Positions 19,683 to 40,600 of a DNA stretch of 64,000 bases are shown here, in pieces. The stretch spans positions 7,626,001-7,690,000 of the forward strand of contig CM106586.1 in the NCBI GenBank assembly GCA_048013815.1, read 5' to 3'. The stretch is from Setoptus koraiensis. Its lineage: Eukaryota > Animalia > Arthropoda. Both the position numbers and the translations under genes were made by a program. Numbering within the stretch: position 1 is the first letter of the stretch; every line of letters starts with the position of its first letter. The notes beneath the pieces were generated by a model. It saw nothing but the letters and a program-made list of their open reading frames with translations. It was not told where the DNA came from and made no database searches.

Positions 19683-19822
19683 TGTTGTATCATATTCTGA
19701 ATAAATTTTCGGGTATTTGTTTAAACAATTGAGCATTAAAGTATTGATAATGTAGTCGAAATCGGCGGTTCCTCACCGCCATTCTCATCCGATTTCGCCA
19801 TAGTTCGTTCAACGCGTGATTG

Positions 19823-22110: not shown

Positions 22111-22329
22111 TAAGTGAACAAAAATAGAATTGAGGGAACTAAAATAGTCACAGATATGCAGCCATTTTCATGGTCTGAAAAAAGGAAATGTTTGAGCATG
22201 GCTACAACAGATAGAAATTTTGGAATGATCACGAATAGGGCCAACTATAGTGAAATCGAGATCGGATGTCAATCAAGGTCAGGAATCGGCGATCTTGAAA
22301 ACGTTATCAATACTTTTATGTTCAATTGT
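22111..22329 (+). promoter_or_regulatory. Orphan copy of the family upstream/promoter region with no gene behind it
   Basis: Aligns with the reverse complement of ~19715-19940 (e.g. GGGAACTAAAATAG, ATATGCAGCCATTTTC, TTATCAATACTTT). Confidence 0.7.
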
Positions 22330-22339
22330 GTACTCTGAT

Positions 22340-22735
22340 CAATTTTGGTACTATAATCGACATTTGATAGAGCAGACACTGTATCAATCTCATCAACCAG
22401 GACTTCACCCTCGGGATCCTCCATATCACTTATAATTTATTGTCTAAATGATGATCGAATGCTGATAATTTTATAGATTCGGCCATACAATACTCACTCT
22501 CACCCATGGGGTTTGATGGCAACTCTCTCAACTTGCGAATGAGTATAATATTCAACATTGGATTCGAATGTAGTGGCAGTGTCGAGAATTCATTATATCT
22601 ATGCGCTAACCTGCATTGTTCTCCTATGCGTAAACAATAATAGCCTGCTCACCATCAGAAGCTTTTTCGATCAGTTCAATCTGGCTTTCCTGATCAAAAT
22701 CGACAATAACCGGAGAAATAAGTAACCATCACGCA
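22340..22735 (-). pseudogene. Degraded fragment of the same family (C-terminal half)
   Basis: Minus strand reads LLISPVIVDFDQESQ (cf. ILIVHVNVDLEQESP), LAHRYNE, DTATTFESN and ISDMEDPEGEV, interrupted by a TAG and frameshifts. Confidence 0.8.
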
Positions 22736-22948
22736 CCAGTCTCATATACTCGCGGGAGGTACAATTTTATTCAATCAATAAAATTCAAATCCCGTGGAAC
22801 TAGCGTTCATTTGTGCTATGTAAGCACCACGAGGAGTGGTTTCTTAATTTTCTGCCATTCGAAACTGCATCTTTCGACATTCTTCATCGTTATTCGATCT
22901 TTCGCGGCTCAGTCCAACGTCGTTCGAATTTTCGACAAAAAGTCCCTC

Positions 22949-24433: not shown

Positions 24434-24824
24434 CGCTTTTTTTTATTCGAGATAGATTCTCGGCTACTTGTTAAACATCAAACTATAGGTAATGTACTCA
24501 AGATCGACGATTCTTCACCACAATTGCCATCCGAGCTCAAGTTCAATACTCTCCGTTCTGCGAGTAATCATCCCGAAATTTCTGTATGTTACAGTCATGC
24601 TAAAACATTTTCCCTTTTTCATAATTTTGAAATGGCTCCATATCTGTGTCTCTTTCAGTTCCCCAACTCTATTTTTACTCACTAAGCCAACATTCCAATT
24701 CGCAGCGCTCATGTCCAAAACGAATCGATATTAACTGACGGATTGTAAAGTTCTAAACGTTTGTCTTATATTCGATCTTCGCTGTTCCTCCGCAAACCTT
24801 ATGCCCGATACGGAGTATTAGCTT

Positions 24825-25023
24825 TGTGTCAAAATGATTGCGAGAATGGATACAGTTGACAAATACGTCATCACAATGACGAATTACAAATGACAGGATA
24901 TCGAATGATAGAAGATTAAAAGATCAAATCGTAGAAGGCAAAAATTTATTCCTTGTGGTGCTTACATGACACAAGTGAACGGAGGATCCACAAGACTTGA
25001 ATTTTGTTGATTGAATAAAATTG
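24825..25023 (+). pseudogene. Internally deleted family remnant (N-terminal fragment joined to 3' UTR)
   Basis: 24825-24866 encodes CVKMIARMDTVDKY; ~24897-25023 matches the paralogue 2 3' UTR (~21805-21930), including AATAAA at 25014. Confidence 0.75.
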
Positions 25024-25405
25024 CATAACCCTCTTACGTTTAACCTAAGCGAGGGGGAGAAAGGGGCCCAACAAAAGGACCCATAATTTTCCATAGTTGT
25101 TTTCCGGTCCTTAGTAGGACATTCTTTTGTTGTTCGTTCCATTACGTTGCACGTAATCATTGTTAGCTCACCTCGATGGAAAGTTGGTCTAATAATAAAC
25201 TTCGCTCGAGTATCAATTGGCAGAGACAGAGTCGCTAAAAGATTGTTTTTTCCACTGGATTCCAGAAAAATAATATTAATAGACTCTCTCCATATAACCC
25301 GTCCAATAGAACAGTCACAAATGGTTTCAATATATTGCAAGCAATGATTTCGAATTAAAAAATTGCAGTTTATCCTTGATTGTCGTGCTCTGATTAATTT
25401 CGATA

Positions 25406-26161
25406 ATGCATCTATTCAATGTCATCATTATTGCTGTAGGGACTCTCATGTTTGTCATGAGTTTCAGTTCATTGATGGTTAACGGACAGGAGCGATTTTT
25501 GGAACAAATAAAGATGATCAACGATCAAGTTGAAAAATGGTACCAGAAAGAATCTCATCTGTTGTCGAATCTCAAAGAGGTTGCTGGACATGCCAGTGCG
25601 GTTCATCTGCAAAGTAAGAGTCAGCATTGGCCAAGACTAATGATGAAAGTATTACAAGTGGCCACTTACACAGGCAAGTTTTGGCCATTTGAATTATCGA
25701 GTGAGGTGGACATGGGAACCGTCACTCATCTTGTGGCCGGGTTACATAATGACATTCCATCAGCAAAGAGACAACTCAGCCGTAATTTCAACTGGTATAT
25801 AAATTACAAGGGCAGATTTCGCAATGCAGATAGTGATGTGTATGTCGAGCAGATGAAAAAATTGTGCTACCCCTACGGTGACCACAGCAAAAATTATTTC
25901 AACTTCCAAAAAGCCATTAACGATCTTTTAAAGATAGCCAAGGAGGAGAATGTTGACGATAAACAGTTCAATGAGCTTGTCATCACTAGTAAGGAGCCTA
26001 TTGCGCCACTTTATTCTACAGCAAAGATCTGTCAATCGATCATAGTGGCAGCAACCTCGCTTCCTCCGCAATGGTTCGTATGGTCTGAACCTGCCGAAAG
26101 TCAGCTCAAGGCATGGCCCTACCCCGGGATCTGGATTTTTCCAGAGGATAAAGAATATTGA
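25406..26161 (+). CDS. Orphan predicted secreted protein (251 aa)
   Basis: Long high-complexity ORF with a hydrophobic N-terminus (MHLFNVIIIAVGTLMFVMSFSSLMVNG), two Cys and no TM; family not recognised. Confidence 0.8.
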   Translation: MHLFNVIIIAVGTLMFVMSFSSLMVNGQERFLEQIKMINDQVEKWYQKESHLLSNLKEVAGHASAVHLQSKSQHWPRLMMKVLQVATYTGKFWPFELSSEVDMGTVTHLVAGLHNDIPSAKRQLSRNFNWYINYKGRFRNADSDVYVEQMKKLCYPYGDHSKNYFNFQKAINDLLKIAKEENVDDKQFNELVITSKEPIAPLYSTAKICQSIIVAATSLPPQWFVWSEPAESQLKAWPYPGIWIFPEDKEY

Positions 26162-26941
26162 TGACGATCGAGCAATCCAGGGCCTGATGAGATCATGGCC
26201 AGATTAAAACAAAGGACCTAACAAGTCGACCCGTTTATTTGGTGTATTGGATCACTTAAACATTCTCGATGTTGAGAGAGTTGGAACAATCTCTCTTGCC
26301 GAGATTTGAATAATTTTTCGTAGTGTAAGATAATGAAACTGGAGACCAGAAGAATAAGAAACTTATCATGCATTACCCCTTAATGAAGCATTTCACATTC
26401 TTTCAAATGTGTATAGCATATGTGTTGGTGCTAGTAACTATGTACAAATCAGGGTATGAGAAATGAGAATGGAAAACTTGGGTCGGAATTACTGTGATCT
26501 TTCGAACCAATAGGTAGATTGATTTTGGGAAAAATTCCATGCATAAATGGTTGCTGGATCAAAAGTGTGACACATTTTGCTGTTTGTGTAACGAATTCAA
26601 TATAGCAATTGAGTCTAGATGGAGACGCAAGTTCAAGTTTCGCTTCACCCAGTTATTCTCTTGAGTTCTCGATCAACACCACAGCTAGTTTGACGTTTTA
26701 CTTTGGCGGAGCTAGCTGTTTTTTTCAATTTTTCTGAATCATCATCGGAGTTTTTGTTCGCGATGTTCAACCTATCATAGACAGAAATTAAATTAAACAG
26801 AAATACCTGAAGAAACAAATATCCGTCACGCATCAATCCCACTTACTCACAGGAAATACAATTTTATTCAAATAACAGAATTGAAATCTCGTAAATCTCC
26901 CGTTCAATTGTTGGTATGTAAGCATCACGGGTAACAAATTT

Positions 26942-28504
26942 TTACCTCTCTGAATTTGATTTTTTACCGACCGTTCGGTATAAATCAAATGTATAAAATT
27001 GACGGCCGTAATAATAAGAGCCGTATTTATGTCTAGTCCAATTCGCGCATAATCTACCGAAAACCATAATTAAAAAGGTGGCTGCAATTGCTATAGCGAA
27101 GGCAATTCCAATTTCAGCACCCAAAGATCCACCGATATAATGGGGATTCCATTGGGGACCGAAATGATGTTGAGAAACGGCGATGTGATTGGTCACGTGA
27201 CTGAAAGCACTCCCGGAAACGGCACTCGTGCCACCAAACTGGACCTGGCCTTCGGGATCTTCCATATCACTCATGAATGATTGCTTGAATGATTCGTCGA
27301 ATTCGGACAACTTTATGAATTCGGCTATGCGACGTTCATCGGCACTTATTCGTCTCAAGAGCCACGCTTTCAGGCCTCGCGAATAGGTGAAAATTTTAAT
27401 GTTGGGATCAAACGTGGTAACAGTGTCAGTGATCTCGCTAAATCTATGCACTAGAATGTCTTCCCCTGTTCGTCCCTCATTCTTTGCTACGTCAACAACA
27501 AGTGCTTCCTCATTCGAAGAATCTTTTTCAAATTTCATAGGGTTTTCTTGCTCTAAATCGACATTGACATGCACAATAAGAATACCCTGGCAATATTGAA
27601 CTGCGCGAATCCATTTTTGAATTCTTTCATCATTGGTGATGCTTTGATCTAGATCGCCCCGATCGTCTCGAGCCAAATAACCTCGCCATGCTAATTGAGC
27701 AATTGCGTAGATTGAACTTTGAGCGTATCCATCAATCAACTGGCAGGCGCCTTTGATCTTTATGAAATCCTCAAGCATGTCGGCCGAGTTCATTGTAACT
27801 TCAATTGAAAATGCTGTATCGGGTTCAGGTTTTAACGCATCGAACAAGACGATATTTTCTACCTTTGTAAATAGGTTCGGGGAATAGTTTGCAGTTAGAC
27901 TAAACAGCTTGCGCATTTCGGGTGACAAATTTTTTGCGTTTTCATCATCGAAACGCAAATCGTTTTTTGTTGCCAATGCGACAATTTTATCGACTGCTTT
28001 CGCTGATTCGGAACTTTTCTCCGCCAATTCCAGCTTCTGCCCTAACGATCTCTTGCAAGTTAGCACAACTTGTCCAGCGAACAACCTGAAGAATTGCGAT
28101 AATCTGTGCTTCTTCTTGCGATGCAAATATTTGCCACGAATGCCATTATTTTTTATTTGTCTATCGTACTGCAACAATTGGTCGGTGAAATGTGGTTCAC
28201 ACACAGAGTGAATTGACGATGCTTGTCGAACTATTTTTCGGAGGTTTTCGATATCCTCTTTTCCGTGGACACTTCGCAGGCAAAAATCAATTACTGTATT
28301 TATATGGTATTCGATGGGAGGGGCATTTTCTGGCATCAGTTTATCCGCAAGATTTAGAAACTTGTCCACTGTATCAATCTTTTCAATCATTTTGACGCAT
28401 TGATCTTTGGTCAATGTCCCTTTCACAATTGTACTGTGAACCATGTTGGTGTATAAGAATCCACCAACTAGGATCACACAAATCATAAATTTGTAGCTAC
28501 TCAT
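26942..28504 (-). CDS. Orphan signal-peptide/C-terminal TM protein, paralogue 4 (520 aa)
   Basis: Intronless ORF; first ~160 aa nearly identical to paralogue 3; minus-strand AATAAA at 26863-26868. Confidence 0.92.
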   Translation of the reverse strand: MSSYKFMICVILVGGFLYTNMVHSTIVKGTLTKDQCVKMIEKIDTVDKFLNLADKLMPENAPPIEYHINTVIDFCLRSVHGKEDIENLRKIVRQASSIHSVCEPHFTDQLLQYDRQIKNNGIRGKYLHRKKKHRLSQFFRLFAGQVVLTCKRSLGQKLELAEKSSESAKAVDKIVALATKNDLRFDDENAKNLSPEMRKLFSLTANYSPNLFTKVENIVLFDALKPEPDTAFSIEVTMNSADMLEDFIKIKGACQLIDGYAQSSIYAIAQLAWRGYLARDDRGDLDQSITNDERIQKWIRAVQYCQGILIVHVNVDLEQENPMKFEKDSSNEEALVVDVAKNEGRTGEDILVHRFSEITDTVTTFDPNIKIFTYSRGLKAWLLRRISADERRIAEFIKLSEFDESFKQSFMSDMEDPEGQVQFGGTSAVSGSAFSHVTNHIAVSQHHFGPQWNPHYIGGSLGAEIGIAFAIAIAATFLIMVFGRLCANWTRHKYGSYYYGRQFYTFDLYRTVGKKSNSER

Positions 28505-28908
28505 AGCTTTTTTTATTCGAGATAGATTCTCGGCTTCTTGTTAAACATCAAACTATAGGTAATGTACTCAAGATCGACGATTCTTGCCACTCATCGATCC
28601 TTATAAGTCTAATAATTTTAAGTATGATTTCGCCACTATTGACATTCGAGCCTCTCTTCATACTCTATGGTTTATTTTATGCTTGGAATTTACAATCTCC
28701 CGAAAATTTCTCTCTATTGTATCCATGCTTCAATTTCTCATCTCTTTCTAAGCTCACCATTTGTAAATTGCTTCACCTTTGTTACTATTTTAGTTGTCTC
28801 AACTCTATTTTCCCTCATCTAGCTAGTTCTATTCTTGGTGCTAAGTACTAAGGTAAAAATAAGTTGATTCCCTCGAACAAACTATAAAGTTTCGATTGCT
28901 CAAAGAGA

Positions 28909-29420
28909 ATGCATGACGACGATTTCAGGGAATCGATCGGAGCTCAATATGAACGGGTCAAAAGTTATAGAGCAGTGGAGAGGGTGGTCAGAATATCAGA
29001 CACTTCCGGTCTAGGTTCATCTTGACCTAAATAGGACAGAAAAATGGGCCCGCCTCTCCGTAGCTGGAAGTTTCTGTGGTTCGGGACTACGAAATTCATG
29101 ATCTGAGTCCCCTAGAGTGTGTGAGGTTTCGCAACGATCGACGCAGGTACCAGGTCGCAAGAACACTTAACACACGCGTTAAATTGATTGTCATAATTAG
29201 ACATTGATATCATCATTATGCACCATTTCGTTCCAAACTCGTTATATTCACTGAGTGATTCGACGAGCATCGAAAGTTCTTCTGTCGATTCGAGAACATT
29301 CTCAAGTTGTTGTAAGATGCAAATATCCGGATGATTTAAACAAATGGACACAATGCAGGTATGCGAGTCAATTCTGTGTGCATAGCCAACACGGACCAAG
29401 GCACAGAAACTACAATCTGC
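28909..29420 (+). pseudogene. Possible decayed Tc1/mariner-like transposase
   Basis: MHDDDFRESIGAQYERVKSYRAVERVVRISDTS resembles the Tc1 N-terminal HTH pattern (...RxxIVxxxxxGKSYxAI...IS). Downstream frames are broken and no clear DDE motif is visible. Confidence 0.25.
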
Positions 29421-29439
29421 GCTGATCGCTGAGCATAGA

Positions 29440-29753
29440 TAGTGATCGGGGGGAGCAGCAAGCATCCTGCTCCCAGATTTGCTGCCTCGTCCCGCCCGAT
29501 CGCTGGCTCCCTGCTCGCACTAGGGAGTAGGCCCGAGCTCTCCCTCCCGCAACGAGGCCTTTCTCTGCTGCTGGTGTCACTCATAGGCATTTTGTGCCCC
29601 TTATCAAAGATGATATGGAGCTAAAAATTTCGCGCTCTCAGTCTGTGAAAGCAGGGCCCAGCTAGCAAGGGGAGCAAGTGGGAGCTAGCGGGAGCAAGTG
29701 GGAGCTGCGGCTCCCTCGCACAGGCCGGGAGCGGTGAGCTGCCGCGATCAGTA
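29440..29753. mobile_element. Possible hAT-like MITE (alternatively GC-rich MED12 promoter/first exon)
   Basis: TAGTGATCG...CGATCAGTA imperfect termini and many internal GGGAGC/GCTCCC motifs; no matching 8-bp TSD found. Confidence 0.35.
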
Positions 29754-29764
29754 ACACACAGCAG

Positions 29765-29954
29765 TGTTAGGCTATGGAATCAGAAGTCCTTTATTTAAAA
29801 GCGTGCACATGTTTTTATAGTCGTAGTCGTGCAGTAAGGTGAACACAGTATAGAATAAAGGCACAGAATAGTATGTGCCGCACAGAATATGATAAAGTAA
29901 GAATAGTTTAGCGCGCAGCGCTTGAGTTGTGGCAAAGGATGCCAGATCCTAACA
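29765..29954 (-). repeat. 3' LTR (190 bp)
   Basis: TGTTAGG...CCTAACA terminal inverted repeat; 173/177 identical to 36579-36755; minus-strand AATAAA at 29790-29795 and TATAAAA nearby. Confidence 0.97.
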
Positions 29955-29968
29955 TCCCGCCCCTTTAA
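29955..29968 (-). other. Polypurine tract
   Basis: Minus strand TTAAAGGGGCGGGA directly abuts the 3' LTR. Confidence 0.85.
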
Positions 29969-29979
29969 GATGGTTCCTC

Positions 29980-32900
29980 CTAATATAAGCGGAGCTTGCT
30001 TTGCTTATGGCTCATCTTTACATGTGTTGGCAGCGTTTGTCCGTAACCTCCGGAGTACATATACTCCGGCATGTATGATGCTGTATAAACTATGATGTTT
30101 CGGAAAGGCTTCAACGCTAGACGGAGAATCGCTATTAGAATGAATACTACAGGCGAAATACAAGTCCAAATAGCCAATAGGGCTATGGCCATGAGGATGT
30201 AAGTCACACTTTGAAGATTTAAAATAGGTGAAAGATCTACGCTTCCTGTGAGGGCTTCCGCAGCTGCTTTTAGTCCTGGGTGTTTGGGCAGGTCCTGTAT
30301 CCATTGTACGGTTGAAATGTTGGCCAAATATTGAGGCATGTTGTCTAATTTGTCGCCTGACTTCTCGTACCCTTCGACTACAATTGGTAGCCGGTACGTT
30401 GCGAATTTGTAATTAATCTTCGACATAGCCGCGTCGATATTCGTTGTGCTGAGGGATATCTTTCGGGCTTCGAAGATATTGTTTCCTGTGACGAAGGTTA
30501 CCTCGTCTGGTAGCTTGAATGGAAAACTCGGGCATGGCACTGTCCCTGATTCCAGGCTGATGTTGCCTGGGAAGCAGTAGATATGGTTGTAGTTGTCGTG
30601 TGCCACGACTTTGCCCAGGTTAAATGTAATATCTTGTCGTTTAAAGCATTGTGTAGTGTTCCATTTATTTGTTACGTCCGGTTTCGAGAATGCCTGGACA
30701 CACTCAGCTCTGTAGGTGTTGTCTTTGAGTATATCGCTACTGTTTACTTCCTGGTAGCACCCTGAGGTGGCATTGACCAGTACCGTCTTGGGTCCGATAT
30801 AGGAATTTAGGCAAAGCTCATTGTTCGTTCCGTTCCAGTATTGGAACGGTTCGGCTTCCATGATCGCCGAAGCTTGGTCAATCAGGTGTGTAGTAAATGC
30901 AAGGATTAATTTGTCATCTTCCACAACGCATGATCGTGGTTTTCCGTAGCTCATTATGTTATGGTTGTATTGTTTGGGTACTCCGAACAAGTGAAAGAGT
31001 TCGGGTGCGATCCCATCTTCGTAGAACCATTTGTCACGTGCTTTCTTTATATTCAGGTTTATGGTCTGGAGTTTATCCATATACTCGGCCATAAGGATGG
31101 ACGATGCCAGGTTGAGTCCTTGTTCGGTCTGGATCGTCACTATCTCTTTAGCAAACTTCTTAAGGTATTTCTCGGTGAGGTTGTGATCAGTCTGGACTGC
31201 TCTTCTCAAGTCTTCTACTTTAGCGTCTAGCTTACGGAGGATGCCTTCGGAATTTTCTTGTGAGGCTCGTAATTGTACGACGGACTTCTTCAAATAGGGG
31301 ACATCATTCAGTTTGACGTCTAACGCCAGCACAAGCGAACTTGTAGAAATCGCAATGGCGGCTACGTCCCCAACGAACCTCCTTTGTCTGTCCGCTGAGT
31401 TGGTGTAGTTACAAAACCCTTTTATCGGCAGCAGCACCAACTCCCTAAATTTCTCGTAGCATTTTTCGCTCAGCATGGTATCGGACGCGTTCGACGCTGT
31501 TGATCCATCGAATAGCGCGTGACATGGATCGTCAAAGATGACGTCCATGTTGTAGTGGACCATCCCTTTTACTACGGGTATATTGGTCTTCGTCCAGATT
31601 ACCGTGTCGGTTGGTATAAATACTGCGTTTGTCATCATAAATATGCTAAATAAGGTTTGGGCTAATAGTACTAGGTTTATAGTCCTTGGAATAAGCTTTT
31701 GTTTGCGTCTACCTTGGTTGTTTGTTGTGGTTTGGTCGTCTGCTGTTGTTTCTGCTTGTTCTGTCCTTTCTGCGTTGGCCTCCTCGTCCAAGTCGATGAC
31801 GGTTGTTGTCGATTCATCTCCTGTTCTGAACGGTTTCATTCTTGAAACATGAGCGGTTGTTATTTTGCCTTTCTTTGCGACCAATTCTAGTTTGTATATA
31901 TCATTATTTTTCACGCCTATCACCTCATACGGGCCTTGGTATCTGGCGATTAGCTTCGACCCGTCCTTGTTGCTGCGTGGTTCGAAGTGTAGCATGACCA
32001 GGTCGCTCACGGCGTACTTAACTGGTCTGTGTTGGCCGTCATATCGTTGTTTAGAGGCGGCATTGGCGGAGCTTATCCGGTCGAGCACCCTAAGCCGGGT
32101 TAGCTCGATCTCGGATGCGATCATCTCCGCATATTGTTCTGCTCGAGAACTTATCTTGATCGGTCCTCCCGGAAGCCTGAGTTTTCTTCCGTAGAGGACT
32201 TCATATGGCGTTATGCCAGTAGTACTGTGTTTGGTGGCATTGACGGCAAGGACGGACATTCCTAGTGCTTCGTCCCATTCCATGTCGTCACGACCTTGTA
32301 TGCTCATAGCGATTTTGTCCTCCAAGGTTTGGATGGCCCTCTCCACCAGCCCGTTACCTTGGTGGTGGTAAGGGGTGGAGAAGGTCATTTTAATACCAAA
32401 GGCTGCCGTTACGTCTTTTGTTAGATTGGCCTTGAATGCAGGCCCATTATCGGTATGCAATTGCTCTGGCACTCCGTGCAAGGCAATTACATCGTTAATC
32501 AAGAATTTAACAAATTCTTCCGCACTAGTAGACCGGGTCGGTCTGGCGATTATGAATTTCGAGAAAGCACAAGTTGCGACTATGACGTGCGCATTCTTGT
32601 GTCGTGTTTGTTTAAGCGGACCTAGATGGTCGCAGCATATCATCTGAAAGGGATGAGCTGTTTCGAAGGAATGCATAGTCCCTGCTGGCGCCATTCTTGG
32701 GACTTTGTGCTTTTGGCAGATTAGGCACTGCTCGACCGTTCTCTTAACGTCGTCTTCTAACGTTTTCCAATAATAATTCTCTCTTACTAAATCGATTGTT
32801 TGTTTGACACCTGCGTGTCCCGCGGCGTGGACTGAGTTAATTACGCCTGGTCTCTTTGCTAGTGGGACCAGCAGTTTTCCCCGTCGATATAGGAATTCAT

Positions 32901-35900
32901 TGTTTATCTCGAACTCGCTGTCCCCGCGTTCTAAGCTTTCGATAGCCTTTTGGCACTCTTCGTCAGTGTCGTAGAGTACCCTATAATCGTCTAAAGGGAT
33001 TACCAACATAAGGAATTTGCTTTCGTCTAGCCCATCGACTGTGCCTCCCGTCGGCTGTCGCGACAGGCAGTCGACGTCGGTATGTTGTCTACCTGATCGG
33101 TAGACGATATTCAAATTATATTCGGATAGCGCAATTGCCCATCGGGCAAGCTTACCTGTTAACGGTTTAGTTCGGCCCAATGTGCATAGGGCACAATGGT
33201 CGACTATAACCGTACATTCTTGTCCGTAAATGTACTGACGAAATTTCTGAATGCTGTAAATAAGGGCTGCACCTTCGAGTTCGGTGACCCCGTAGCTCTC
33301 TTCGTTGGAGCATGTTCGGCGGCTGGCCGTCGCGATTATCCTCCAGTCATTTCTCTGTTTTTGGTAAAGAATACCGCCGAAGCCTATCTTTGAAGCATCG
33401 GTCTTTAGTAGTAGTGGCAAGCCTGGCACAAAGTACGAGATAGCCTCGCTTTCTATTAGAGCCTTTTTCAACTGCTCGAAGCTCTTCTGGTGCTCGTCTG
33501 TCCATGTAAATCTATTGTCCTTTTTGGTGAGGTCAGTAAGTGGCGCCGCGATCCACGCGAATCTTGGCACAAAGCGTCTATAGTAGCCAAACAGTCCTAG
33601 AGTTTGGCGTACCTGCTCCAGGCTAGTTGGTACCTGTAAGCCGCTTATCGCTTTTATTTTATCGGGTTGTGGCTCTATACCACTTTTGCTTAGTTTGTGG
33701 CCAAGAATATTTGCGGACGCCATAGCGAATTGGCATTTTCTTGCCTTGATTGTGAGATTATGTTCAGATAGACGTTCTAGTACTGATTCTAGACTTTCCA
33801 AGTGTTTGTTCCAAGTTTTAGACATGATCACTATATCATCAAGATATGCGAATATCTGTTGTCCTACGATGCCTGACAAAACTATGGACATCATTCGACT
33901 AAACGACGCCGCGGCATTACAAAGACCGAATGGCAGGCGAAGGAATTCGTACAGTCCGTTGGCTGTCATAAAGGCTGTGAATTCCCTTGACGCCTCGTCT
34001 AATGGCATCTGCCAATAGCCGGCGTTAAGATCTATGCAAGTGAAAAATTCCGCACCATTACCGCTTTCTAATATCTCTTCTTGGTTTGGAAGCGGGTAGA
34101 CCCACTTCTTTGTTGCCGCGTTCAGACGTCTATAATCGACGCAAAATCTAATTGTTCCGTCGCGCTTCTTGACCAGGACAACTGGACTGGCGAACGGCGA
34201 CTGCGAATGCCGAATAACGCCTTTGTCCAGCATGTCCTGAACTTCGTTTTGGATTAGGTCGCGCTCCTTGTATGCGAGGCGCCTGAGCGGCGTCTTGAAT
34301 GGGGTCGGGTCAAGCAATTCTATTTTGTGTGTGTACGCTGATGTACATCCTAGTTTCTCTCCTGCGGAGAACACGTGTTTGTAGTTATTTATGACGGAGA
34401 TTAGCTGACCCTGCTGTTGCTTGGACAGGTGATCGCCAATTTCAATGTCGCCAATGTCGCCAGCCTGGATTATGGCCATTGTCTTCCTATTTTCGCTTGT
34501 GTCCAGATGTTCTGGCGAATATGTTTGCGCTTTATACTCGTTATCCACGGCGTCCCAAGACGCTAACTGCTCCAGGCCTTTGATTTCGATTGGGCTCTTG
34601 GTCGGGTTGGCTATTGTTGTTATTATCTTCTCGTCCGCGATCATGTTGATGCTTTTGGGCAGCAGCGCCTGGTCTTCTCTGTGTTTAGGCTCGATAATTA
34701 TAAGTTTGTTCTTATTGGTTGACCCGTTAATTTTGAGTTCAACCGTTATAATTGAATTCGCTGGGACTTTTATAGGATTGATAGCGTGGCAGCTTCCTTC
34801 CGGGAATGGCTCTACGTTACTTGGCGTTGCATTAGTAATCATGTCGTCGTTCGCTCCTCCGACGAAGATGTTTCTTTCTCTTATGATGTCTTTACCTACG
34901 ATCGCGTCGAAGGGAAGTTCTGTTGCGACCGTGAGTTCGTGTTCAAAGTTGTGTTGCTGATTGAGAGTATTTAATGTTATTTTGACCGTTGTCTCTTTGA
35001 GCTCGCCCATAGAGGTGCCGTTAGCTGTCCCCATGGTGAGGCTAGTTGGCGTGAGCGTTAGATTTAGCTGTAGGGCCTTACTTTCTTTGATCATTGAGGA
35101 CGATGCGCCTGTGTCTATCAGTGCTGTGACAGGCTTGTTGTTTATGAAGATTTTCCTCAGGAAGGGTTTCTCTGGGGCTATGTAGGCTACCACACGGTTA
35201 TTGTTGTTATTACCGTCGTTCTGGTTACGAGGTGGGGCATCGTTTGATTGTTGTCTGTTGTCGCCATAGTTGTTGTGAGGTGGGCCATTGTTGTTACGGT
35301 TGCTGTAGTTGTTGTTCCTAGGCTGCTGTTGGTTACCGCGGTAGTGTCCGTTGTTGTTTCTACCTCGGCCTCTGAATCCGTTACCCTGCTGATTATGGTT
35401 ATCTTGTTGATTGTTGTTTCGGTTATTATTGTAGTTGCTATTCTGATTGTTGTTACGGTAATCTCCTCGAGAGTTGTTGCGTGAGTAGTTGCCTCGGTTG
35501 TTGTTGCCTTGATGATTATTTCTCCTGTTGAAGTTGTTGTTTTGATTGTTGTTATAACCGTTATTTTGATTGTTGTTATAGCCGTTGTTTTGGTTGTTTC
35601 TCTTGCGGCACACATCCCAAGTGTGGCCTCTTTTGTGGCAGTGGTTGCAGCTTACGTTGTTATTATTCGACCTATCACCCCTGTTGTAGATGGCGTTAGC
35701 TTTGCCTTTGCAAGCTTCACGTTTGCGGTTACCTTCTTCTATGAGGCTACAGGTTTTGAGTAACTCTATAAGAGTGAGAGGGTTGGCCTGGGTGAGGTAT
35801 GGTTCGAAAGATGGTAATAGTCTTTCTTTGATTTTATCGACGATTTCTGATTCGTCCATCGACGGATTATATTCTTTGCATAAATAGCGCATGTCGACGA

Positions 35901-36348
35901 TGAAGTTTGTTACGGGTTCTTCCTCCTTTTGTCGTTTACGATCTAACTCACGTGCGATGACTGTCTTCGTTGCTTGTGGCAGGAAGGTCTCTTCGAATAA
36001 CTTCTTGATTTGGTTGATGTCCTCCTTTAAGGGGATTGCTAATGCTGGTGCGTCTGGTGGCGGTGGTGGTAGTATGGCTATTTTGTACCAGTTAAGGGCT
36101 GTTCCTTTGAGAAAAACTGGAAAGCGTATGGCCTTGGTCTTATCGTCCCAGCCGTTGAGCTCTGAATCGAACATGTACGTGTTGATCCAGGCTCGTGCTG
36201 TGTCGCGGTCGCCTTCATATATCTCTATTTTCTTCCTCATCCGGAATCCTTCCTCGAATGTTCCGGTCAACCCGGCGACGTTGCCATCGGTTGAATCTTG
36301 ATTACCGCCAGTTCTTTGCTGACTGTTGCTAGTGCCTTGGTCGGCCAT
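29980..36348 (-). CDS. Gag-Pol-Env polyprotein (2122 aa, single ORF)
   Basis: CCHC knuckle CNHCHKRGHTWDVC; protease LIDTGASS; RT PFGLCNA/YLDD; RNase H TDASKIGFGG; integrase HHCC, D,D-35-E region and GPY motif; then signal-like segment, RQRR/FVG cleavage site, 8 N-glycosylation sequons and C-terminal TM. Confidence 0.95.
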   Translation of the reverse strand: MADQGTSNSQQRTGGNQDSTDGNVAGLTGTFEEGFRMRKKIEIYEGDRDTARAWINTYMFDSELNGWDDKTKAIRFPVFLKGTALNWYKIAILPPPPPDAPALAIPLKEDINQIKKLFEETFLPQATKTVIARELDRKRQKEEEPVTNFIVDMRYLCKEYNPSMDESEIVDKIKERLLPSFEPYLTQANPLTLIELLKTCSLIEEGNRKREACKGKANAIYNRGDRSNNNNVSCNHCHKRGHTWDVCRKRNNQNNGYNNNQNNGYNNNQNNNFNRRNNHQGNNNRGNYSRNNSRGDYRNNNQNSNYNNNRNNNQQDNHNQQGNGFRGRGRNNNGHYRGNQQQPRNNNYSNRNNNGPPHNNYGDNRQQSNDAPPRNQNDGNNNNNRVVAYIAPEKPFLRKIFINNKPVTALIDTGASSSMIKESKALQLNLTLTPTSLTMGTANGTSMGELKETTVKITLNTLNQQHNFEHELTVATELPFDAIVGKDIIRERNIFVGGANDDMITNATPSNVEPFPEGSCHAINPIKVPANSIITVELKINGSTNKNKLIIIEPKHREDQALLPKSINMIADEKIITTIANPTKSPIEIKGLEQLASWDAVDNEYKAQTYSPEHLDTSENRKTMAIIQAGDIGDIEIGDHLSKQQQGQLISVINNYKHVFSAGEKLGCTSAYTHKIELLDPTPFKTPLRRLAYKERDLIQNEVQDMLDKGVIRHSQSPFASPVVLVKKRDGTIRFCVDYRRLNAATKKWVYPLPNQEEILESGNGAEFFTCIDLNAGYWQMPLDEASREFTAFMTANGLYEFLRLPFGLCNAAASFSRMMSIVLSGIVGQQIFAYLDDIVIMSKTWNKHLESLESVLERLSEHNLTIKARKCQFAMASANILGHKLSKSGIEPQPDKIKAISGLQVPTSLEQVRQTLGLFGYYRRFVPRFAWIAAPLTDLTKKDNRFTWTDEHQKSFEQLKKALIESEAISYFVPGLPLLLKTDASKIGFGGILYQKQRNDWRIIATASRRTCSNEESYGVTELEGAALIYSIQKFRQYIYGQECTVIVDHCALCTLGRTKPLTGKLARWAIALSEYNLNIVYRSGRQHTDVDCLSRQPTGGTVDGLDESKFLMLVIPLDDYRVLYDTDEECQKAIESLERGDSEFEINNEFLYRRGKLLVPLAKRPGVINSVHAAGHAGVKQTIDLVRENYYWKTLEDDVKRTVEQCLICQKHKVPRMAPAGTMHSFETAHPFQMICCDHLGPLKQTRHKNAHVIVATCAFSKFIIARPTRSTSAEEFVKFLINDVIALHGVPEQLHTDNGPAFKANLTKDVTAAFGIKMTFSTPYHHQGNGLVERAIQTLEDKIAMSIQGRDDMEWDEALGMSVLAVNATKHSTTGITPYEVLYGRKLRLPGGPIKISSRAEQYAEMIASEIELTRLRVLDRISSANAASKQRYDGQHRPVKYAVSDLVMLHFEPRSNKDGSKLIARYQGPYEVIGVKNNDIYKLELVAKKGKITTAHVSRMKPFRTGDESTTTVIDLDEEANAERTEQAETTADDQTTTNNQGRRKQKLIPRTINLVLLAQTLFSIFMMTNAVFIPTDTVIWTKTNIPVVKGMVHYNMDVIFDDPCHALFDGSTASNASDTMLSEKCYEKFRELVLLPIKGFCNYTNSADRQRRFVGDVAAIAISTSSLVLALDVKLNDVPYLKKSVVQLRASQENSEGILRKLDAKVEDLRRAVQTDHNLTEKYLKKFAKEIVTIQTEQGLNLASSILMAEYMDKLQTINLNIKKARDKWFYEDGIAPELFHLFGVPKQYNHNIMSYGKPRSCVVEDDKLILAFTTHLIDQASAIMEAEPFQYWNGTNNELCLNSYIGPKTVLVNATSGCYQEVNSSDILKDNTYRAECVQAFSKPDVTNKWNTTQCFKRQDITFNLGKVVAHDNYNHIYCFPGNISLESGTVPCPSFPFKLPDEVTFVTGNNIFEARKISLSTTNIDAAMSKINYKFATYRLPIVVEGYEKSGDKLDNMPQYLANISTVQWIQDLPKHPGLKAAAEALTGSVDLSPILNLQSVTYILMAIALLAIWTCISPVVFILIAILRLALKPFRNIIVYTASYMPEYMYSGGYGQTLPTHVKMSHKQSKLRLY

Positions 36349-36568
36349 TGTTGAGACGTTTGGAGTCTGGAACTCCTCGTTGTTTTCTGATTCTAATAAG
36401 TCGACGATGTGTTCTTTAAAGAACTTGTTGATATTACTTTTCTTGATTGATGTAACTAGTTGTTCGAGAAGGGGTCTGGCCTCCTCGGGGCTTTCGTGAT
36501 CACCAATTTTACTGCTTTGTTGACTTTGAATTAACTAACTAACTTGCATGTGAGTCCGAGTTCTACTC

Positions 36569-36578
36569 AGAACCTCCA
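36569..36578 (-). other. Primer binding site, tRNA-Gln-like
   Basis: TGGAGGTTCT immediately follows the 5' LTR. The first 9 nt are complementary to the animal tRNA-Gln 3' end as I recall it (...GAACCTCCA). Confidence 0.75.
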
Positions 36579-36755
36579 TGTTAGGCTATGGAATCAGAAG
36601 TAGTTTATTTAAAAGCGTGCACATGTTTATATAGTCGTAGTCGTGCAGTAAGGTGAGCACAGTATAGAATAAAGGCACAGAATAGTATGTGCCGCACAGA
36701 ATATGATAAAGTAAGAATAGTTTAGCGCGCAGCGCTTGAGTTGTGGCAAAGGATG
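36579..36755 (-). repeat. 5' LTR (runs into assembly gap)
   Basis: Matches the 3' LTR with 4 substitutions over 177 bp. Confidence 0.97.
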
Positions 36756-37255
36756 NNNNNNNNNNNNNNNNNNNNNNNNNNNNNNNNNNNNNNNNNNNNN
36801 NNNNNNNNNNNNNNNNNNNNNNNNNNNNNNNNNNNNNNNNNNNNNNNNNNNNNNNNNNNNNNNNNNNNNNNNNNNNNNNNNNNNNNNNNNNNNNNNNNNN
36901 NNNNNNNNNNNNNNNNNNNNNNNNNNNNNNNNNNNNNNNNNNNNNNNNNNNNNNNNNNNNNNNNNNNNNNNNNNNNNNNNNNNNNNNNNNNNNNNNNNNN
37001 NNNNNNNNNNNNNNNNNNNNNNNNNNNNNNNNNNNNNNNNNNNNNNNNNNNNNNNNNNNNNNNNNNNNNNNNNNNNNNNNNNNNNNNNNNNNNNNNNNNN
37101 NNNNNNNNNNNNNNNNNNNNNNNNNNNNNNNNNNNNNNNNNNNNNNNNNNNNNNNNNNNNNNNNNNNNNNNNNNNNNNNNNNNNNNNNNNNNNNNNNNNN
37201 NNNNNNNNNNNNNNNNNNNNNNNNNNNNNNNNNNNNNNNNNNNNNNNNNNNNNNN
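36756..37255. other. Assembly gap (500 N)
   Basis: Run of n. Confidence 1.
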
Positions 37256-37653: not shown

Positions 37654-40600
37654 ATGGCCTTTGCACATTTAGAAAGGAGGCCGCTCAAGAAGAGCGTGCC
37701 CAAACTGGGCCCGCCAGACATTTATCCCCAGGACCCGAAACAGAAAGAGGACGAGCTGACATCCATAAATGTCAAGCAGGGCTTTTGTCCGGTCGCCTCC
37801 ACATCGGAGGAGTTTGGTTCGGCCAGGACTGCCGATTTCAAATGTTTTGGTGTGTATTTTAGCGCACTTAAAAGTGAGAAACAACGTATAAACACCATGC
37901 AGGATGCCACCAAAAAGAAACAGCTAGTTAACACTAAAGAAATATGGTATGTCCATGCTAAAACTAAAAACGCCGTAGACAATTGGTTCAAGGATCTGGC
38001 CAATGGCACAAAGGCACTCAATCAACTTGGCAAACGTATACCTATGTTCAACAATAAAGAAGGAATATTTATGCAATTATATGATAGTAGGGTACCCATC
38101 GTTAAAGCAGTTTGGTTTATTAAAATGTCAGCCATACATGCCATCGCACTTAGCGAATCTAGCTCAAAATCAAAAAAGAAACAATTGCCAGATCAATCTC
38201 AAGAGCTGACAGCCTCATTGTGTCGCTATATTGGTGAATTGTATCAAAAAATGTCAGACTCCTATTGCCAGTCGGAAATATTGACGGGCGAAAAGACTAA
38301 TAGCAACAGCAACAACAATACGGGCCTCAAGGGAACGCCGTCATCGCAATCGTCCTTACCTAGTTCGATTCTATTACCGTCCCCAGAAGATATTGATTTG
38401 TCTTGTCCGTCCTCATTGAAAGATTCAGCAACGGCCGCTTCAATTCTCACATCAATCACTGCTTCTACAGCAGCTCTATCAGTGGCATCCATAACAATTT
38501 CCAATGCGGAAAGCTCCATTGCTGCAAACACTCAATGGCAATACCAATTGCAACTAGCTCGCAATCTCTTTGATGAGGGCCTATTAGATCAATATGACTT
38601 TCTTTGTTGGCTATTGGATTTCTTTGAGAAGAATAGAAATATCAATGATCTAACATTGAAATTAATATGCCCTTTATTGTTACAATACGTGATAGATTTC
38701 GCTAAATTAAATGTATTATCAAGACGATTGGCTCACGTTTGCGCTCAAAGACTAACGCTATTATTGAACAACTGTAATATTAATGAATCCGCAATACAAA
38801 AGGATGCCATATATATTCTGTCTTGCATCATTCAAGTTATCACATTAGAATGTCCCACTGCAATGGTCAGACATCATATTGTAGATGCCAAGCCTACATC
38901 ATATCAAGGTTCACCACTAGACAATATACCTTGCCCACCGTCTCTGTTGCCCATGACGGAGTCCGATCTCAACTTGGAACTTAGAAGATCTATTCATGAT
39001 GCCGAGAAAGATATATCACAAAGGAGTAACCTAGCCGATACTAGATGGTCATGTTTCAATTCCAACTCCACCGGTAACATAATTAATAGATTATTAAATG
39101 TTTTAGACATATTAGATAAACACAACTTTGATAGGATAGACCAAAACAATTCCCTAGACATTCTATATGGTAAGATCTTTTCCAGTCCCATCAAGCCGAA
39201 ACAAAACAACAGTAATCAGGCGTCGACCGTAGATTCTGCAGCCACTTTGGCATCGTCCACAACAAAAACGACTAAGCAACAAGATCAGCAAGGCACCAAT
39301 AACCAGCCAGATAGCTATGATGACCATGTTACCGTATTCCTTTGCGAATGGGCTATTACTACTCATAGGACTGGCGAACATAGAGCATTTGTGGTGGCTA
39401 GACTGTTAGAAAGGCGACAGAATGATTTATTAATATATAACAACAACGATGATTCTCAACCAAATACTTATCAGGACCTACTTTTACAATTTTTAGATAC
39501 TGCATCCCCTATTATAAACGAACCAGATGATTGCCTAGAAAACAAAAAGACATTTAGTAATTTTATACTACTGTTTAGTGAATTGATACGCTGCGAGGTT
39601 TTTTCACATTATTCCTACATGTGTACATTGATCTCTCGTGGTATGTTCAATAATTTAAACAACAATACAACCTCAAGCGCTATCTCTAATTTTTTGCAAG
39701 GACCTCCACCATCAAATATCAGCCATCCCTTATCGGCTCAGCCGGCCCCGATGATGCGATCATTAGGATTCAGTCCGTTATCATCCCAACATACTCAAAA
39801 TGATTCCCTTTCTAATCTTCTTGACAACAATGGACATGTTAGCATGGACGACGTTGACGCTGATTTGGGGAAAATCCTACAAGACATCAATGGGCAACAA
39901 GATGGCAACGATCCATCTGATTTGTTTACCGACTATATTGGAATTGGTAATTCGAGCGCAAATAACAGACAAGACAAACCCACTGGCAATGCTAGTAGTA
40001 TTCTCTCATCTTCAACTATAGCCCCCAATCATGATACACAAAATCAGACTAGCAATAATACAAAAACGCCAAATATTATTCCCACTGACAGTAGTTGTCC
40101 CAATTTACTTGAACAACGTCACCTGATATACATCAAGCATCTGCCGATACCTGATGACGATAGTTTTATTCACGACTCCAATCAGCGAACTCTGCTTCTA
40201 TACGGTTTTGGAAAGGACAGAGATGAAATCAAGCAAAGGGCCCGCAAGTTGCATAAGGAGATCAACAGTAAAATATTTTCCAAAAAATCTTCTAGGGATA
40301 TTAATGATGGTGGTAAAATCAAAAGGCCTCTTTTCAGCAGTGGCTTCAGTCTGGATAGTGTTTTAGCCAAGTTTGAGCTTCTGACCCACCACGATCAACA
40401 TGTTATTGCAAATGATATAGCCACTGCCATAGTTGGTATGTTCAGTGGTGTATCCAATGGCCAGACTAATCATTTACCCACTTTGGAAGCGTTGGCGTTC
40501 ATCTTTGACGTTCTGCGTGTAGCTGTAAATGTTAGCGGCCTAATAGACTTGATAATACAAATACTCAAAGAACTACCAGATGTTGAGGCGCAATTGAAAC

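What the first reader, a model, noticed from the sequence alone, without database searches (positions are those of the whole stretch)
29980..36348. Gag, Pol and Env in one uninterrupted ORF of a Ty3/Gypsy element
Seen: after the integrase GPY motif and an acidic/Thr linker, the same frame continues ~570 codons with no stop or frameshift into an envelope-like protein. Known: Drosophila gypsy-type errantiviruses carry env as a separate ORF expressed from a spliced RNA, and often frameshift between gag and pol; in-frame pol-env fusions are known to me mainly from BEL/Pao elements. Inference: this is a potentially infectious, retrovirus-like element whose Env is released co-translationally by signal peptidase at an internal signal (QGRRKQKLIPR-TINLVLLAQTLFSIFMMTNA). 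Env-bearing Gypsy elements exist in other invertebrates, so novelty must be checked against them.
Basis: partly seen in the sequence, partly recalled or inferred. Interest (0 to 1): 0.85.

Follow-up and report, generated by a model that had tools for sequence, protein, structure and literature searches.

The report
Gypsy retroelement with in-frame fusion envelope
An intact retrovirus-like Ty3/Gypsy element in an arthropod-like genome encodes capsid, enzymes and a paramyxovirus-F-type envelope protein as one 2122-codon reading frame, and this layout recurs in its unnamed database relatives but I found it described only for a different family (nematode belpaoviruses).

Summary
Window 29980-36348 (minus strand) is one stop-free 2122-codon ORF. 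It encodes Gag, a CCHC knuckle, PR, RT, RNase H and IN, then a 585-residue tail. 190-bp TG...CA LTRs flank it, with a PBS-like TGG and a polypurine tract. The 5' LTR runs into a 500-N scaffold gap.

The tail is an F-type class I fusion glycoprotein by profile and by fold. It has a signal-like segment at the IN/Env junction, the polyprotein's only R-x-K/R-R site followed by a fusion-peptide-like stretch, and a C-terminal membrane anchor.

The fusion is not an accident of this copy. The four closest Pol relatives (39-55% identity) keep it, although the linker varies from 31 to 108 residues. In this clade Env has no conserved start codon of its own.

Best reading (inferred, not shown): a Gag-Pol-Env polyprotein whose Env part enters the ER through an internal signal and is then cut by signal peptidase and a furin-like protease. 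A spliced env mRNA cannot be excluded.

F-type Env-carrying Gypsy elements are known, and so are single Gag-Pol-Env polyproteins in Belpaoviridae. I found no description of the fused layout in Gypsy. The same Env is also fused to Ty1/Copia-type polyproteins.

Verdict: new variant of a known kind; interest 0.55.

The parts
29765..36755 (-). Whole LTR element as visible in the assembly. The outer ~13 nt of the 5' LTR are lost in the scaffold gap; expected full length is about 7.0 kb.
   Evidence: LTR pair and boundaries.
36579..36755 (-). 5' LTR, visible 177 nt; it is cut off by the gap.
   Evidence: Direct repeat D2 and alignment. There are 4 mismatches in 177 nt against the 3' LTR.
36756..37255 (.). 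Run of 500 N (scaffold gap) abutting the 5' LTR. It prevents any check of the target-site duplication.
36561..36578 (-). Primer-binding-site-like stretch that starts TGG directly after the LTR's terminal CA. The tRNA was not identified.
   Evidence: There is no tRNA gene in the window.
29980..36348 (-). Single Gag-Pol-Env ORF of 2122 codons plus stop.
35755..36123 (-). Gag capsid-like domain (aa 76-198).
   Evidence: Pfam Retrotrans_gag and Arc_C, both below the curated cut-off but concordant.
35608..35649 (-). Single CCHC zinc knuckle (aa 234-247).
35164..35598 (-). Asn/Gln-rich low-complexity spacer between the knuckle and PR (aa 251-395).
   Evidence: repeat family D1; 58 N+Q residues in a 100-aa window.
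34876..35154 (-). Aspartic protease (aa 399-491). The D-T-G aspartate is conserved in 5 of 5 clade members.
33691..34173 (-). Reverse transcriptase, RVT_1 type (aa 726-886). Both YLDD aspartates are conserved 5/5.
33118..33504 (-). RNase H (aa 949-1077).
31828..32868 (-). Integrase: H2C2 finger, DDE core and SH3-like C-terminal domain with GPY (aa 1161-1507). D, D and E are conserved 5/5.
31711..31827 (-). Acidic/Thr-rich IN-Env linker (aa 1508-1546). It is poorly conserved and varies in length among relatives, but is always open and in frame.
31615..31710 (-). Internal signal-peptide-like element (aa 1547-1578). It consists of a basic flank (net +5), a hydrophobic core, and small residues at -3 and -1 before aa 1579.
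   Evidence: (helix at tail residues 19-35).
31378..31614 (-). F2-like N-terminal Env subunit (aa 1579-1657). It ends in RQRR (31378-31389), the only R-x-K/R-R motif in the polyprotein.
   Evidence: P1 Arg nearly invariant in 40 sequences; both Arg conserved 5/5.
31303..31377 (-). Fusion-peptide-like hydrophobic stretch directly after the basic site (aa 1658-1682).
   Evidence: up to 72% identity to clade members; aligned to the cleavage site/fusion peptide/HRA region of F0 structures.
30229..31302 (-). F1-like ectodomain (aa 1683-2040): a long heptad-type helix and beta-rich head domains with conserved cysteines.
30088..30228 (-). C-terminal transmembrane anchor region (aa 2041-2087).
29983..30087 (-). 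Short cytoplasmic tail (aa 2088-2122).
29955..29966 (-). Polypurine tract (11 of 12 purines) directly upstream of the 3' LTR.
29765..29954 (-). 3' LTR, 190 bp, with TG...CA ends and short inverted termini.

Best explanation
This is a structurally intact Ty3/Gypsy (Metaviridae-type) LTR retroelement in an animal genome that is arthropod-like, probably chelicerate. It carries a paramyxovirus/baculovirus-F-type class I fusion glycoprotein fused in frame to the C-terminus of integrase.

Most likely mechanism:
1. The unspliced full-length RNA is translated into one Gag-Pol-Env polyprotein.
2. The first ~1550 residues, which contain no hydrophobic segment, stay in the cytosol.
3. When the internal signal-like element (aa 1547-1578) emerges, the ribosome is targeted to the ER and the Env part is translocated.
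4. Signal peptidase frees the Env N-terminus near aa 1579, leaving Gag-Pol membrane-tethered until the element's own protease trims it.
5. A furin-like protease then cuts after RQRR (aa 1657), exposing the fusion peptide of a membrane-anchored F1-like subunit.

Shown: the ORF, the domains, the F-type identity of Env, and the conservation of the fusion, of the junction signal and of the cleavage motif.

Inferred: ER targeting, both cleavages, and any role in cell-to-cell spread.
For: ORF and domains.

LTR, PBS and PPT.

Env identity:
- The family profile hits paramyxo/pneumovirus F0 structures, E 1e-5 to 1e-3, over the cleavage site, fusion peptide and HRA.
- The AF2 model has pLDDT 73, and its top 50 PDB fold hits are all F proteins, best E 5e-10.
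- BFVD hits include baculovirus F/Ld130, arthropod mononegavirus glycoproteins and F0.

Topology: the only hydrophobic segments in 2122 aa are at 1559-1578, 1658-1680 and 2041-2087, and there is a single R-x-K/R-R motif, at aa 1654.

Conservation of the fusion:
- The 4 closest Pol relatives (39-55% identity) all carry Env in the same protein.
- They lie on 6-8 kb contigs that leave no room for introns.
- The linker has 12-38% identity and 31-108 residues, yet is always open.
- 37 of 96 representative Env relatives have more than 400 aa upstream in the same protein.

No own start codon: the nearest upstream Met is 55, 53, 145, 213 and 27 aa from the hydrophobic core in the clade, against a median of 4 in standalone Envs. 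A positive flank is present in 46 of 47 fused proteins.

Logic: with no stop after IN, every ribosome that makes Pol must run on into Env.

Precedent: belpaoviruses encode a single Gag-Pol-Env polyprotein (PMC9094657). Internal signal peptides in cytosol-then-lumen polyproteins are established for Flaviviridae (my knowledge).
Against: - There are no expression, protein or read-level data for this locus.
- A 1:1:1 Gag:Pol:Env output is unusual for retrovirus-like elements.
- Cer1, another Gypsy element with one long ORF, also expresses its C-terminal part as a separate protein, CERV (PMC10309623; that this is by splicing is my recollection). An open frame therefore does not exclude a subgenomic mRNA.
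- Across all fused relatives, a Met within 15 aa of the signal is somewhat more frequent than chance (21 of 47, against about 14 expected), so some lineages may also use an internal start.
- No signal-peptide predictor was available. The cleavage site rests on the -3/-1 rule read by eye.
- The LTRs differ at 4 of 177 positions, and the 5' LTR touches a scaffold gap, so age and copy integrity are uncertain.
Confidence: 0.65

Rival explanations
1. Env is made mainly from a subgenomic mRNA. This mRNA would either be spliced, borrowing a start codon from the 5' end as in Drosophila gypsy, or start at an internal promoter. On this view the open frame across the IN/Env junction is a tolerated by-product of env overlapping pol in the same frame. 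This rival is not exclusive of the polyprotein route.
For: Cer1 shows that a Gypsy element with one long ORF can still express its C-terminal part as a separate protein. Retroviral env is classically made from a spliced mRNA (stated in PMC10309623). Some fused relatives have a Met close to the signal more often than chance predicts.
Against: Splicing does not require the removed stretch to be open, yet the junction is open in all 5 clade members despite a linker that is free to vary in length and sequence. It is also open in dozens of Gypsy-type and Copia-type relatives. There is no conserved Met near the signal in this clade, which argues against an internal promoter with its own start. The host looks intron-poor: Med12 is one 2663-codon ORF. 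No splice model was built or tested here.
Confidence: 0.25
2. The fusion is an assembly or consensus artefact: a collapsed repeat, or an indel error that removed the pol stop or a frameshift.
For: The element abuts a 500-N scaffold gap and its LTRs are not identical, which is typical of repeats that assemble poorly.
Against: The junction lies about 5 kb from the gap, inside continuous sequence. Independently assembled relatives at 28-41% overall identity have the same in-frame layout. The junction carries a conserved, functional-looking signal element.
Confidence: 0.02
3. The copy is an inactive relic or a host-co-opted gene, and the single frame has no present role in an element life cycle.
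For: Only one copy is in the window. The LTRs differ at 4 of 177 sites. No expression data are available.
Against: All catalytic residues of PR, RT and IN, and the Env cleavage motif, are intact and conserved. The LTRs, the PBS-like site and the PPT are all present. A co-opted gene would not be expected to keep a full Gag-Pol. In a neutral-decay simulation, an ORF of this length stayed open in only 5-21% of runs at the divergence the LTRs suggest.
Confidence: 0.06

Closest known systems
F-type Env-carrying Ty3/gypsy elements: the 'ancient errantiviruses' of Chary & Hayashi (eLife 2026, PMC13524379) and TelKA of bdelloid rotifers (Rodriguez et al. 2017, PMC5408684)
   Same: - Ty3/Gypsy Pol.
- Gene order gag-pol-env.
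- A paramyxovirus-F-like Env with a conserved furin-type site and fusion peptide.
- Presence in non-insect animals, including arachnids.
- A short RNase H-to-IN bridge (about 84 aa), which fits their 'RNase H + mini domain' type. This rests on spacing only; I did not fold it.
   Different: Those papers treat gag, pol and env as separate ORFs (ORF3 in TelKA). They do not mention in-frame fusion, an internal signal peptide or how env is expressed. Here all three are one frame, and Env has no start codon of its own. I could not place this element in their tree, because their supplementary data are not held.
Atlas virus and other nematode belpaoviruses, such as Cer13 (Merchant et al. 2022, PMC9094657)
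   Same: A single Gag-Pol-Env polyprotein without stop codons or introns, flanked by LTRs. Env sits at the C-terminus with a C-terminal membrane anchor.
   Different: They belong to a different family (BEL/Pao RT lineage) and have a different fusogen class: a phlebovirus Gn-Gc-like class II protein. Here the Pol is Ty3/Gypsy and the Env is an F-type class I protein. So this element works like them but is not a member.
Drosophila errantiviruses (gypsy, ZAM, Idefix)
   Same: A Ty3/Gypsy backbone with an F-type (baculovirus F-related) Env that has a furin-type site.
   Different: Per PMC13524379, insect errantiviruses have a duplicated pseudo-RNase H, for which this Pol has too little room. Pfam Baculo_F does not hit this Env.
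Cer1 of Caenorhabditis elegans (PMC10309623)
   Same: A Ty3/Gypsy element with one very long ORF whose post-integrase part encodes an extra protein.
   Different: The Cer1 C-terminal part is not a membrane fusogen. It forms part of CERV, a nuclear RNA-export factor that is a separate protein. Here the tail is a genuine F-type glycoprotein with a signal, a cleavage site and a membrane anchor.
Flavivirus/pestivirus-type polyproteins (mechanistic analogue only)
   Same: A cytosolic N-terminal part is followed by an internal signal sequence. That signal sends the downstream glycoprotein into the ER, where signal peptidase separates them (established knowledge).
   Different: These are unrelated RNA viruses with no reverse transcription. 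The analogy concerns processing topology only, and it is inferred here, not tested.

Membership tests
Ty3/Gypsy (Metaviridae-type) LTR retrotransposon | Pol domain order PR-RT-RNase H-IN with an RVT_1-type RT | tested here: met
   Pfam order and scores. The closest relatives are Gypsy-type polyproteins.
Ty3/Gypsy (Metaviridae-type) LTR retrotransposon | Flanking LTRs with TG...CA ends, a PBS after the 5' LTR and a PPT before the 3' LTR | tested here: met
   190-bp LTRs, a TGG-initiated PBS-like site, and 11/12 purines in the PPT.
Ty3/Gypsy (Metaviridae-type) LTR retrotransposon | Target-site duplication | not testable with these tools
   The 5' flank is lost in the 500-N gap.
Env-carrying Ty3/gypsy ('errantivirus' in the operational sense of PMC13524379) | Uninterrupted gag, pol and env on one LTR element, with Env of F or gB type | tested here: met
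   The Env is F type.
Insect Errantivirus (gypsy/ZAM type) | env as a separate ORF3 downstream of pol | tested here: not met
   No stop or frame change lies between IN and Env.
Insect Errantivirus (gypsy/ZAM type) | Duplicated 'pseudo' RNase H in the bridge between RNase H and IN (PMC13524379) | tested here: inconclusive
   Only about 84 aa separate the end of RNase H from the IN finger, which seems too short for a second RNase H fold. The bridge was not folded.
Paramyxovirus/baculovirus F-type class I fusion glycoprotein | F-like fold of the ectodomain | tested here: met
   The top 50 Foldseek PDB hits are all F proteins, best E 5e-10, probability 1.00. TM-scores are low (0.2-0.4) for a monomer model. 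The profile hits F0 chains.
Paramyxovirus/baculovirus F-type class I fusion glycoprotein | Multibasic cleavage site immediately followed by a hydrophobic fusion peptide and a heptad-repeat helix, plus a C-terminal TM | tested here: met
   RQRR at aa 1654-1657, a hydrophobic stretch at 1658-1680, a long helix at tail residues 166-239, and a TM at 2041-2087. The P1 Arg is nearly invariant in 40 sequences.
Paramyxovirus/baculovirus F-type class I fusion glycoprotein | Trimer formation and membrane-fusion activity | not testable with these tools
   Only a monomer model was made, and there are no functional data.
Belpaoviridae Gag-Pol-Env polyprotein elements (Atlas/Cer13 type) | Single Gag-Pol-Env ORF | tested here: met
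   compared with PMC9094657.
Belpaoviridae Gag-Pol-Env polyprotein elements (Atlas/Cer13 type) | BEL/Pao-lineage Pol and a phlebovirus-like class II Env | tested here: not met
   The Pol matches Gypsy-type families and relatives. The Env is a class I F type.

The most novel reading that the evidence does not exclude
In-frame fusion of an F-type fusogen to the end of Pol, entered through a conserved internal signal peptide, may be a widespread and so far undescribed expression strategy of animal LTR retroelements. It is used both by Ty3/Gypsy lineages and by Ty1/Copia-type lineages. Copia-type elements belong to Pseudoviridae, a family currently described as having no extracellular phase. The strategy would be a splicing-independent, flavivirus-like way of making an envelope.
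Probability: 0.4. Interest if true: 0.75.

Novelty: new variant of a known kind. Interest (0 to 1): 0.55.

Why it matters
How envelope-bearing retroelements outside Drosophila express Env is an open question, and the largest survey (PMC13524379) says transmission mechanisms are unknown. A conserved Gag-Pol-Env frame with an internal signal peptide gives a concrete model that can be tested by description alone. In this model Env synthesis is obligatorily coupled to Pol synthesis, and Gag-Pol is delivered to the same membrane as Env.

The result also extends the single-polyprotein design from Belpaoviridae, with their class II Env, to Metaviridae-type elements with a class I Env. The side observation that the same Env is fused to Copia-type polyproteins bears on whether Pseudoviridae really lack enveloped forms. 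It also bears on how often fusogen modules moved between retroelement superfamilies.

Tried and rejected
- Pfam on the tail alone found nothing. Pfam on 40 family members gave only 2 weak Fusion_gly hits.
- The word-index protein search with the Env region found a single hit, so I relied on the full HMMER scan.
- The exact look-up of the neighbouring Med12 protein to name the host found no record. Host placement therefore rests on Med12 homologues and is only 'arthropod, probably chelicerate/mite-like'.
- The tRNA scan of the window found none, so the primer tRNA is undetermined.
- The bacterial promoter/terminator scan of the LTR is irrelevant to a eukaryote and I disregarded it.
- The supplementary tables of PMC13524379 are not held, so I could not check whether its catalogue already contains fused elements.
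- I tested whether the four neighbouring ~500-aa membrane-protein paralogues are Env-derived.
- I considered and rejected an assembly artefact and a relic or co-opted gene (see rivals).


Full report
**1.

The minus strand of window 29980-36348 is one ATG-initiated ORF of 2122 codons with no internal stop. Pfam places the following in this one frame:
- a retrotransposon Gag/Arc-like capsid domain (aa 76-198);
- an aspartic protease (399-491);
- an RVT_1 reverse transcriptase (726-886);
- RNase H (949-1077);
- an integrase with H2C2 finger, DDE core and SH3-like end (1161-1507).

A single CCHC knuckle lies at aa 234-247 and the GPY motif at aa 1472. After an acidic/Thr-rich linker, the frame runs on for 585 residues that match no Pfam family.

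**2. Element anatomy**

- A 190-bp direct repeat with TG...CA ends and short inverted termini flanks the ORF. The 3' LTR is at 29765-29954. The 5' LTR runs from 36579 to 36755 and is then cut by a run of exactly 500 N, a scaffold gap at 36756-37255.
- The two LTRs differ at 4 of 177 comparable positions.
- A TGG-initiated PBS-like site follows the 5' LTR directly, and a tract with 11 of 12 purines precedes the 3' LTR.
- The target-site duplication cannot be checked because of the gap.
- No tRNA gene is in the window, so the primer tRNA is undetermined.
- No second copy, fragment or solo LTR is in the window.

**3. Host**

The adjacent plus-strand ORF (37654-45645) is Mediator subunit Med12, encoded as a single 2663-codon frame. 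Its best named relatives are arthropod proteins, mostly chelicerate. An eriophyoid mite protein matches at 41% identity over the full queried region, followed by other mites, spiders and ticks. The named Pol relatives come from a pseudoscorpion, an eriophyoid mite and Daphnia.

So the host is an animal, probably an intron-poor chelicerate. The species was not identified: the exact look-up failed.

**4. What the tail is**

Read directly from the sequence:
- The only hydrophobic segments in the whole polyprotein are at aa 1559-1578, 1658-1680 and 2041-2087.
- The only R-x-K/R-R motif is RQRR at 1654-1657, immediately before the second hydrophobic segment.
- The tail has 11 cysteines and 9 N-x-S/T sequons.

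A full HMMER scan of 1.84 billion representative proteins found 378 relatives, 100 of them at E of 1e-10 or better. In an alignment of 40 of them, eight cysteines, a Y-x-G-P motif and the P1 arginine of the basic site are nearly invariant.

Three lines of evidence agree on its identity:
- The profile of that alignment hits paramyxovirus and pneumovirus fusion glycoprotein F0 structures, E 1e-5 to 1e-3, over the cleavage site, fusion peptide and first heptad repeat.
- An AlphaFold2 model (mean pLDDT 73, with 210 residues at 90 or above) returns only F proteins among its top 50 PDB matches. The best has E 5e-10 and probability 1.00 over about 500 columns. TM-scores are low, as expected for a monomer of a protein with two very different conformations.
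- In the viral predicted-structure library it matches baculovirus F/Ld130, glycoproteins of arthropod negative-strand viruses, and F0.

The tail is therefore an F-type class I fusion glycoprotein.

**5. The fusion is a conserved trait**

In this element's own clade:
- The four closest Pol relatives have 55, 48, 48 and 39% identity over RT-IN and are 2110-2238 aa long.
- All four contain the Env-family domain in the same protein, E 1e-39 to 1e-98.
- They lie on contigs of 6.4-7.7 kb that the ORF nearly fills, so they are plain uninterrupted frames and not spliced gene models.

Region-by-region comparison of the five proteins:

| Region | Identity to the window protein |
|---|---|
| RT | 50-61% |
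| IN | 34-50% |
| F1-like ectodomain | 15-29% |
| IN-Env linker | 12-38%, with length 31 to 108 residues |

Despite this freedom in the linker, it is open and in frame in all five. The catalytic residues of PR, RT and IN and both conserved arginines of the basic site are identical in all five.

More widely:
- Of 96 representative relatives whose Env N-terminus is matched, 37 have more than 400 residues upstream in the same protein and a further 28 have 100-400.
- P0151 is another complete Gag-PR-RT-RNase H-IN-Env protein, 2353 aa on an 8070-nt contig.

**6. The junction looks like an internal signal peptide, and Env has no start of its own**

- In 47 fused relatives with a strong hydrophobic segment at the junction, 46 have a net positive charge in the 12 residues before it. 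In the window protein that charge is +5.
- In the window protein, small residues occupy the -3 and -1 positions before aa 1579 (read). No signal-peptide predictor was available.
- The nearest in-frame Met upstream of the hydrophobic core is 55 residues away here, and 53, 145, 213 and 27 residues away in the four clade members. In standalone Env relatives the median is 4.
- The in-frame Met positions near the junction are aa 1504, inside the IN C-terminal domain, and aa 1571-1572, inside the signal-like segment itself.
- Across all fused relatives, a Met within 15 residues is somewhat commoner than chance (21 of 47, against about 14 expected). Some lineages may therefore keep an internal start.

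**7. Mechanism**

Gag and Pol can only be made by translating this frame, and the frame has no stop after IN. Every ribosome that completes Pol must therefore continue into Env. This is logic from the sequence.

The most economical reading is a Gag-Pol-Env polyprotein that is processed in steps:
1. The first ~1550 residues, which have no hydrophobic segment, stay cytosolic.
2. The internal signal directs the nascent chain to the ER.
3. Signal peptidase frees the Env N-terminus.
4. Gag-Pol is left tethered to the same membrane until the element's protease trims it.
5. A furin-like enzyme cuts after RQRR and exposes the fusion peptide.

Every step after translation is inferred. The topology follows the established processing of Flaviviridae polyproteins (my knowledge). 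[quoted passage not shown]

The main rival is a subgenomic env mRNA. The Gypsy element Cer1 also has one long ORF yet expresses its post-integrase part as a separate protein (PMC10309623). That rival does not explain why a removable, freely varying linker should stay open in so many lineages. It cannot be excluded without transcript data, and the two routes could coexist.

I put the polyprotein route at about 0.65 and a mainly subgenomic route at about 0.25.

**8. Comparison with what is known**

- Env-carrying Ty3/gypsy elements with F-type or gB-type Env are now documented across metazoan phyla, arachnids and rotifers included (PMC13524379; TelKA in PMC5408684).
- This element fits that operational class. 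By its short RNase H-to-IN spacing (about 84 aa), it fits the 'ancient' subgroup better than the insect one.
- Those papers treat gag, pol and env as separate ORFs. They do not mention fused frames, internal signals or splicing.
- Targeted literature searches found no description of a Gag-Pol-Env single frame outside Belpaoviridae.
- The library is incomplete and the supplementary tables of the key paper are not held. Prior listing in a catalogue therefore cannot be excluded.
- The element fails the membership feature 'separate env ORF' of the Drosophila-type errantiviruses. It also fails the Pol and Env type features of Belpaoviridae.

I rate it a new variant of a known kind.

**9. Side finding**

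The same Env family sits in frame at the C-terminus of Ty1/Copia-type polyproteins.
- Five such proteins (1912-2187 aa) have copia-type Gag, IN before RVT_2, and then Env.
- hhalign gives probability 100% and E 4e-42 for one of them against the Env profile.
- A census finds 23 Copia-type and 23 Gypsy-type fused proteins with similar hallmark frequencies:

| Hallmark | Copia-type | Gypsy-type |
|---|---|---|
| Hydrophobic segment at the junction | 21/23 | 23/23 |
| C-terminal TM | 21/23 | 20/22 |

- All five lie on 6-8 kb contigs.
- Env nearest neighbours are of the same superfamily in 57 of 61 cases (label-shuffle mean 30, maximum 46). Deeper clusters mix both types. This crude analysis suggests rare old exchanges followed by long co-divergence.
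- The ICTV profile of Pseudoviridae says these elements have no extracellular phase (PMC8515867, abstract shown).
- Two further Gypsy-type proteins carry Pfam Baculo_F in the same protein as RT and IN.

**10. Age and integrity**

If the 4/177 LTR difference reflected age, a random-substitution simulation suggests an ORF of this length would stay open in only about 5-21% of runs. That is mildly surprising but not significant. The 5' LTR lies at a contig end and may come from a different copy.

All enzymatic motifs are intact, and I found no broken gene in the element. Nothing here shows activity or infectivity.

Noticed in passing
Proteins P0014, P0015, P0043, P0088, P0137 (hits); census: Ty1/Copia-type polyproteins (copia Gag, IN before RVT_2) carry the same F-type Env family in frame at their C-terminus. 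They have a hydrophobic segment at the junction and a C-terminal TM, and they lie on 6-8 kb contigs. I found no description of this arrangement.
   Followed up: partly
Proteins P0278 and P0280: Gypsy-type proteins whose precomputed Pfam list includes Baculo_F (PF12259) together with RT and IN in one protein. In-frame pol-env fusion therefore also occurs with the baculovirus-F-type Env family.
   Followed up: no
window 18117-19736 (-), 20239-21753 (+), 22949-24433 (-), 26942-28504 (-): Four intronless paralogous ORFs of 494-539 aa with 74-86% identity to one another. Each has an N-terminal and a C-terminal hydrophobic segment and 8-10 cysteines. They have no Pfam family and no match to the Env profile, and the AF2 model was unusable (pLDDT 33).
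   Followed up: partly
window 37654-45645 (+): Mediator subunit Med12 is encoded as a single 2663-codon ORF without introns. It is divergently oriented next to the element, across the scaffold gap. This points to an intron-poor arthropod (chelicerate-like) host.
   Followed up: partly
window 36756-37255: A run of exactly 500 N (scaffold gap) cuts off the outer end of the 5' LTR. The adjacency of the element to Med12 and the target-site duplication are therefore unverified.
   Followed up: yes
window 35164-35598 (-), aa 251-395 of the polyprotein: An extreme Asn/Gln-rich low-complexity spacer lies between the zinc knuckle and PR (58 N+Q residues in 100 aa), built from degenerate short DNA repeats. 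One clade member has a similar run (49), the others do not.
   Followed up: partly
window 29112-29465 (-): A small Cys-rich ORF (117 aa, 10 Cys) lies about 300 nt outside the 3' LTR. It has no family match.
   Followed up: no
window 1-16000 versus 16000-30000: Base composition shifts from about 45-57% GC, with few long ORFs, to about 39-43% GC in the stretch that holds the paralogue cluster.
   Followed up: no
window 29765-29954 and 36579-36755: The LTRs differ at 4 of 177 sites although the 6.4-kb ORF is fully open. In a neutral simulation the ORF stayed open in 5-21% of runs at comparable divergence. The 5' LTR at the contig end may derive from another copy.
   Followed up: partly
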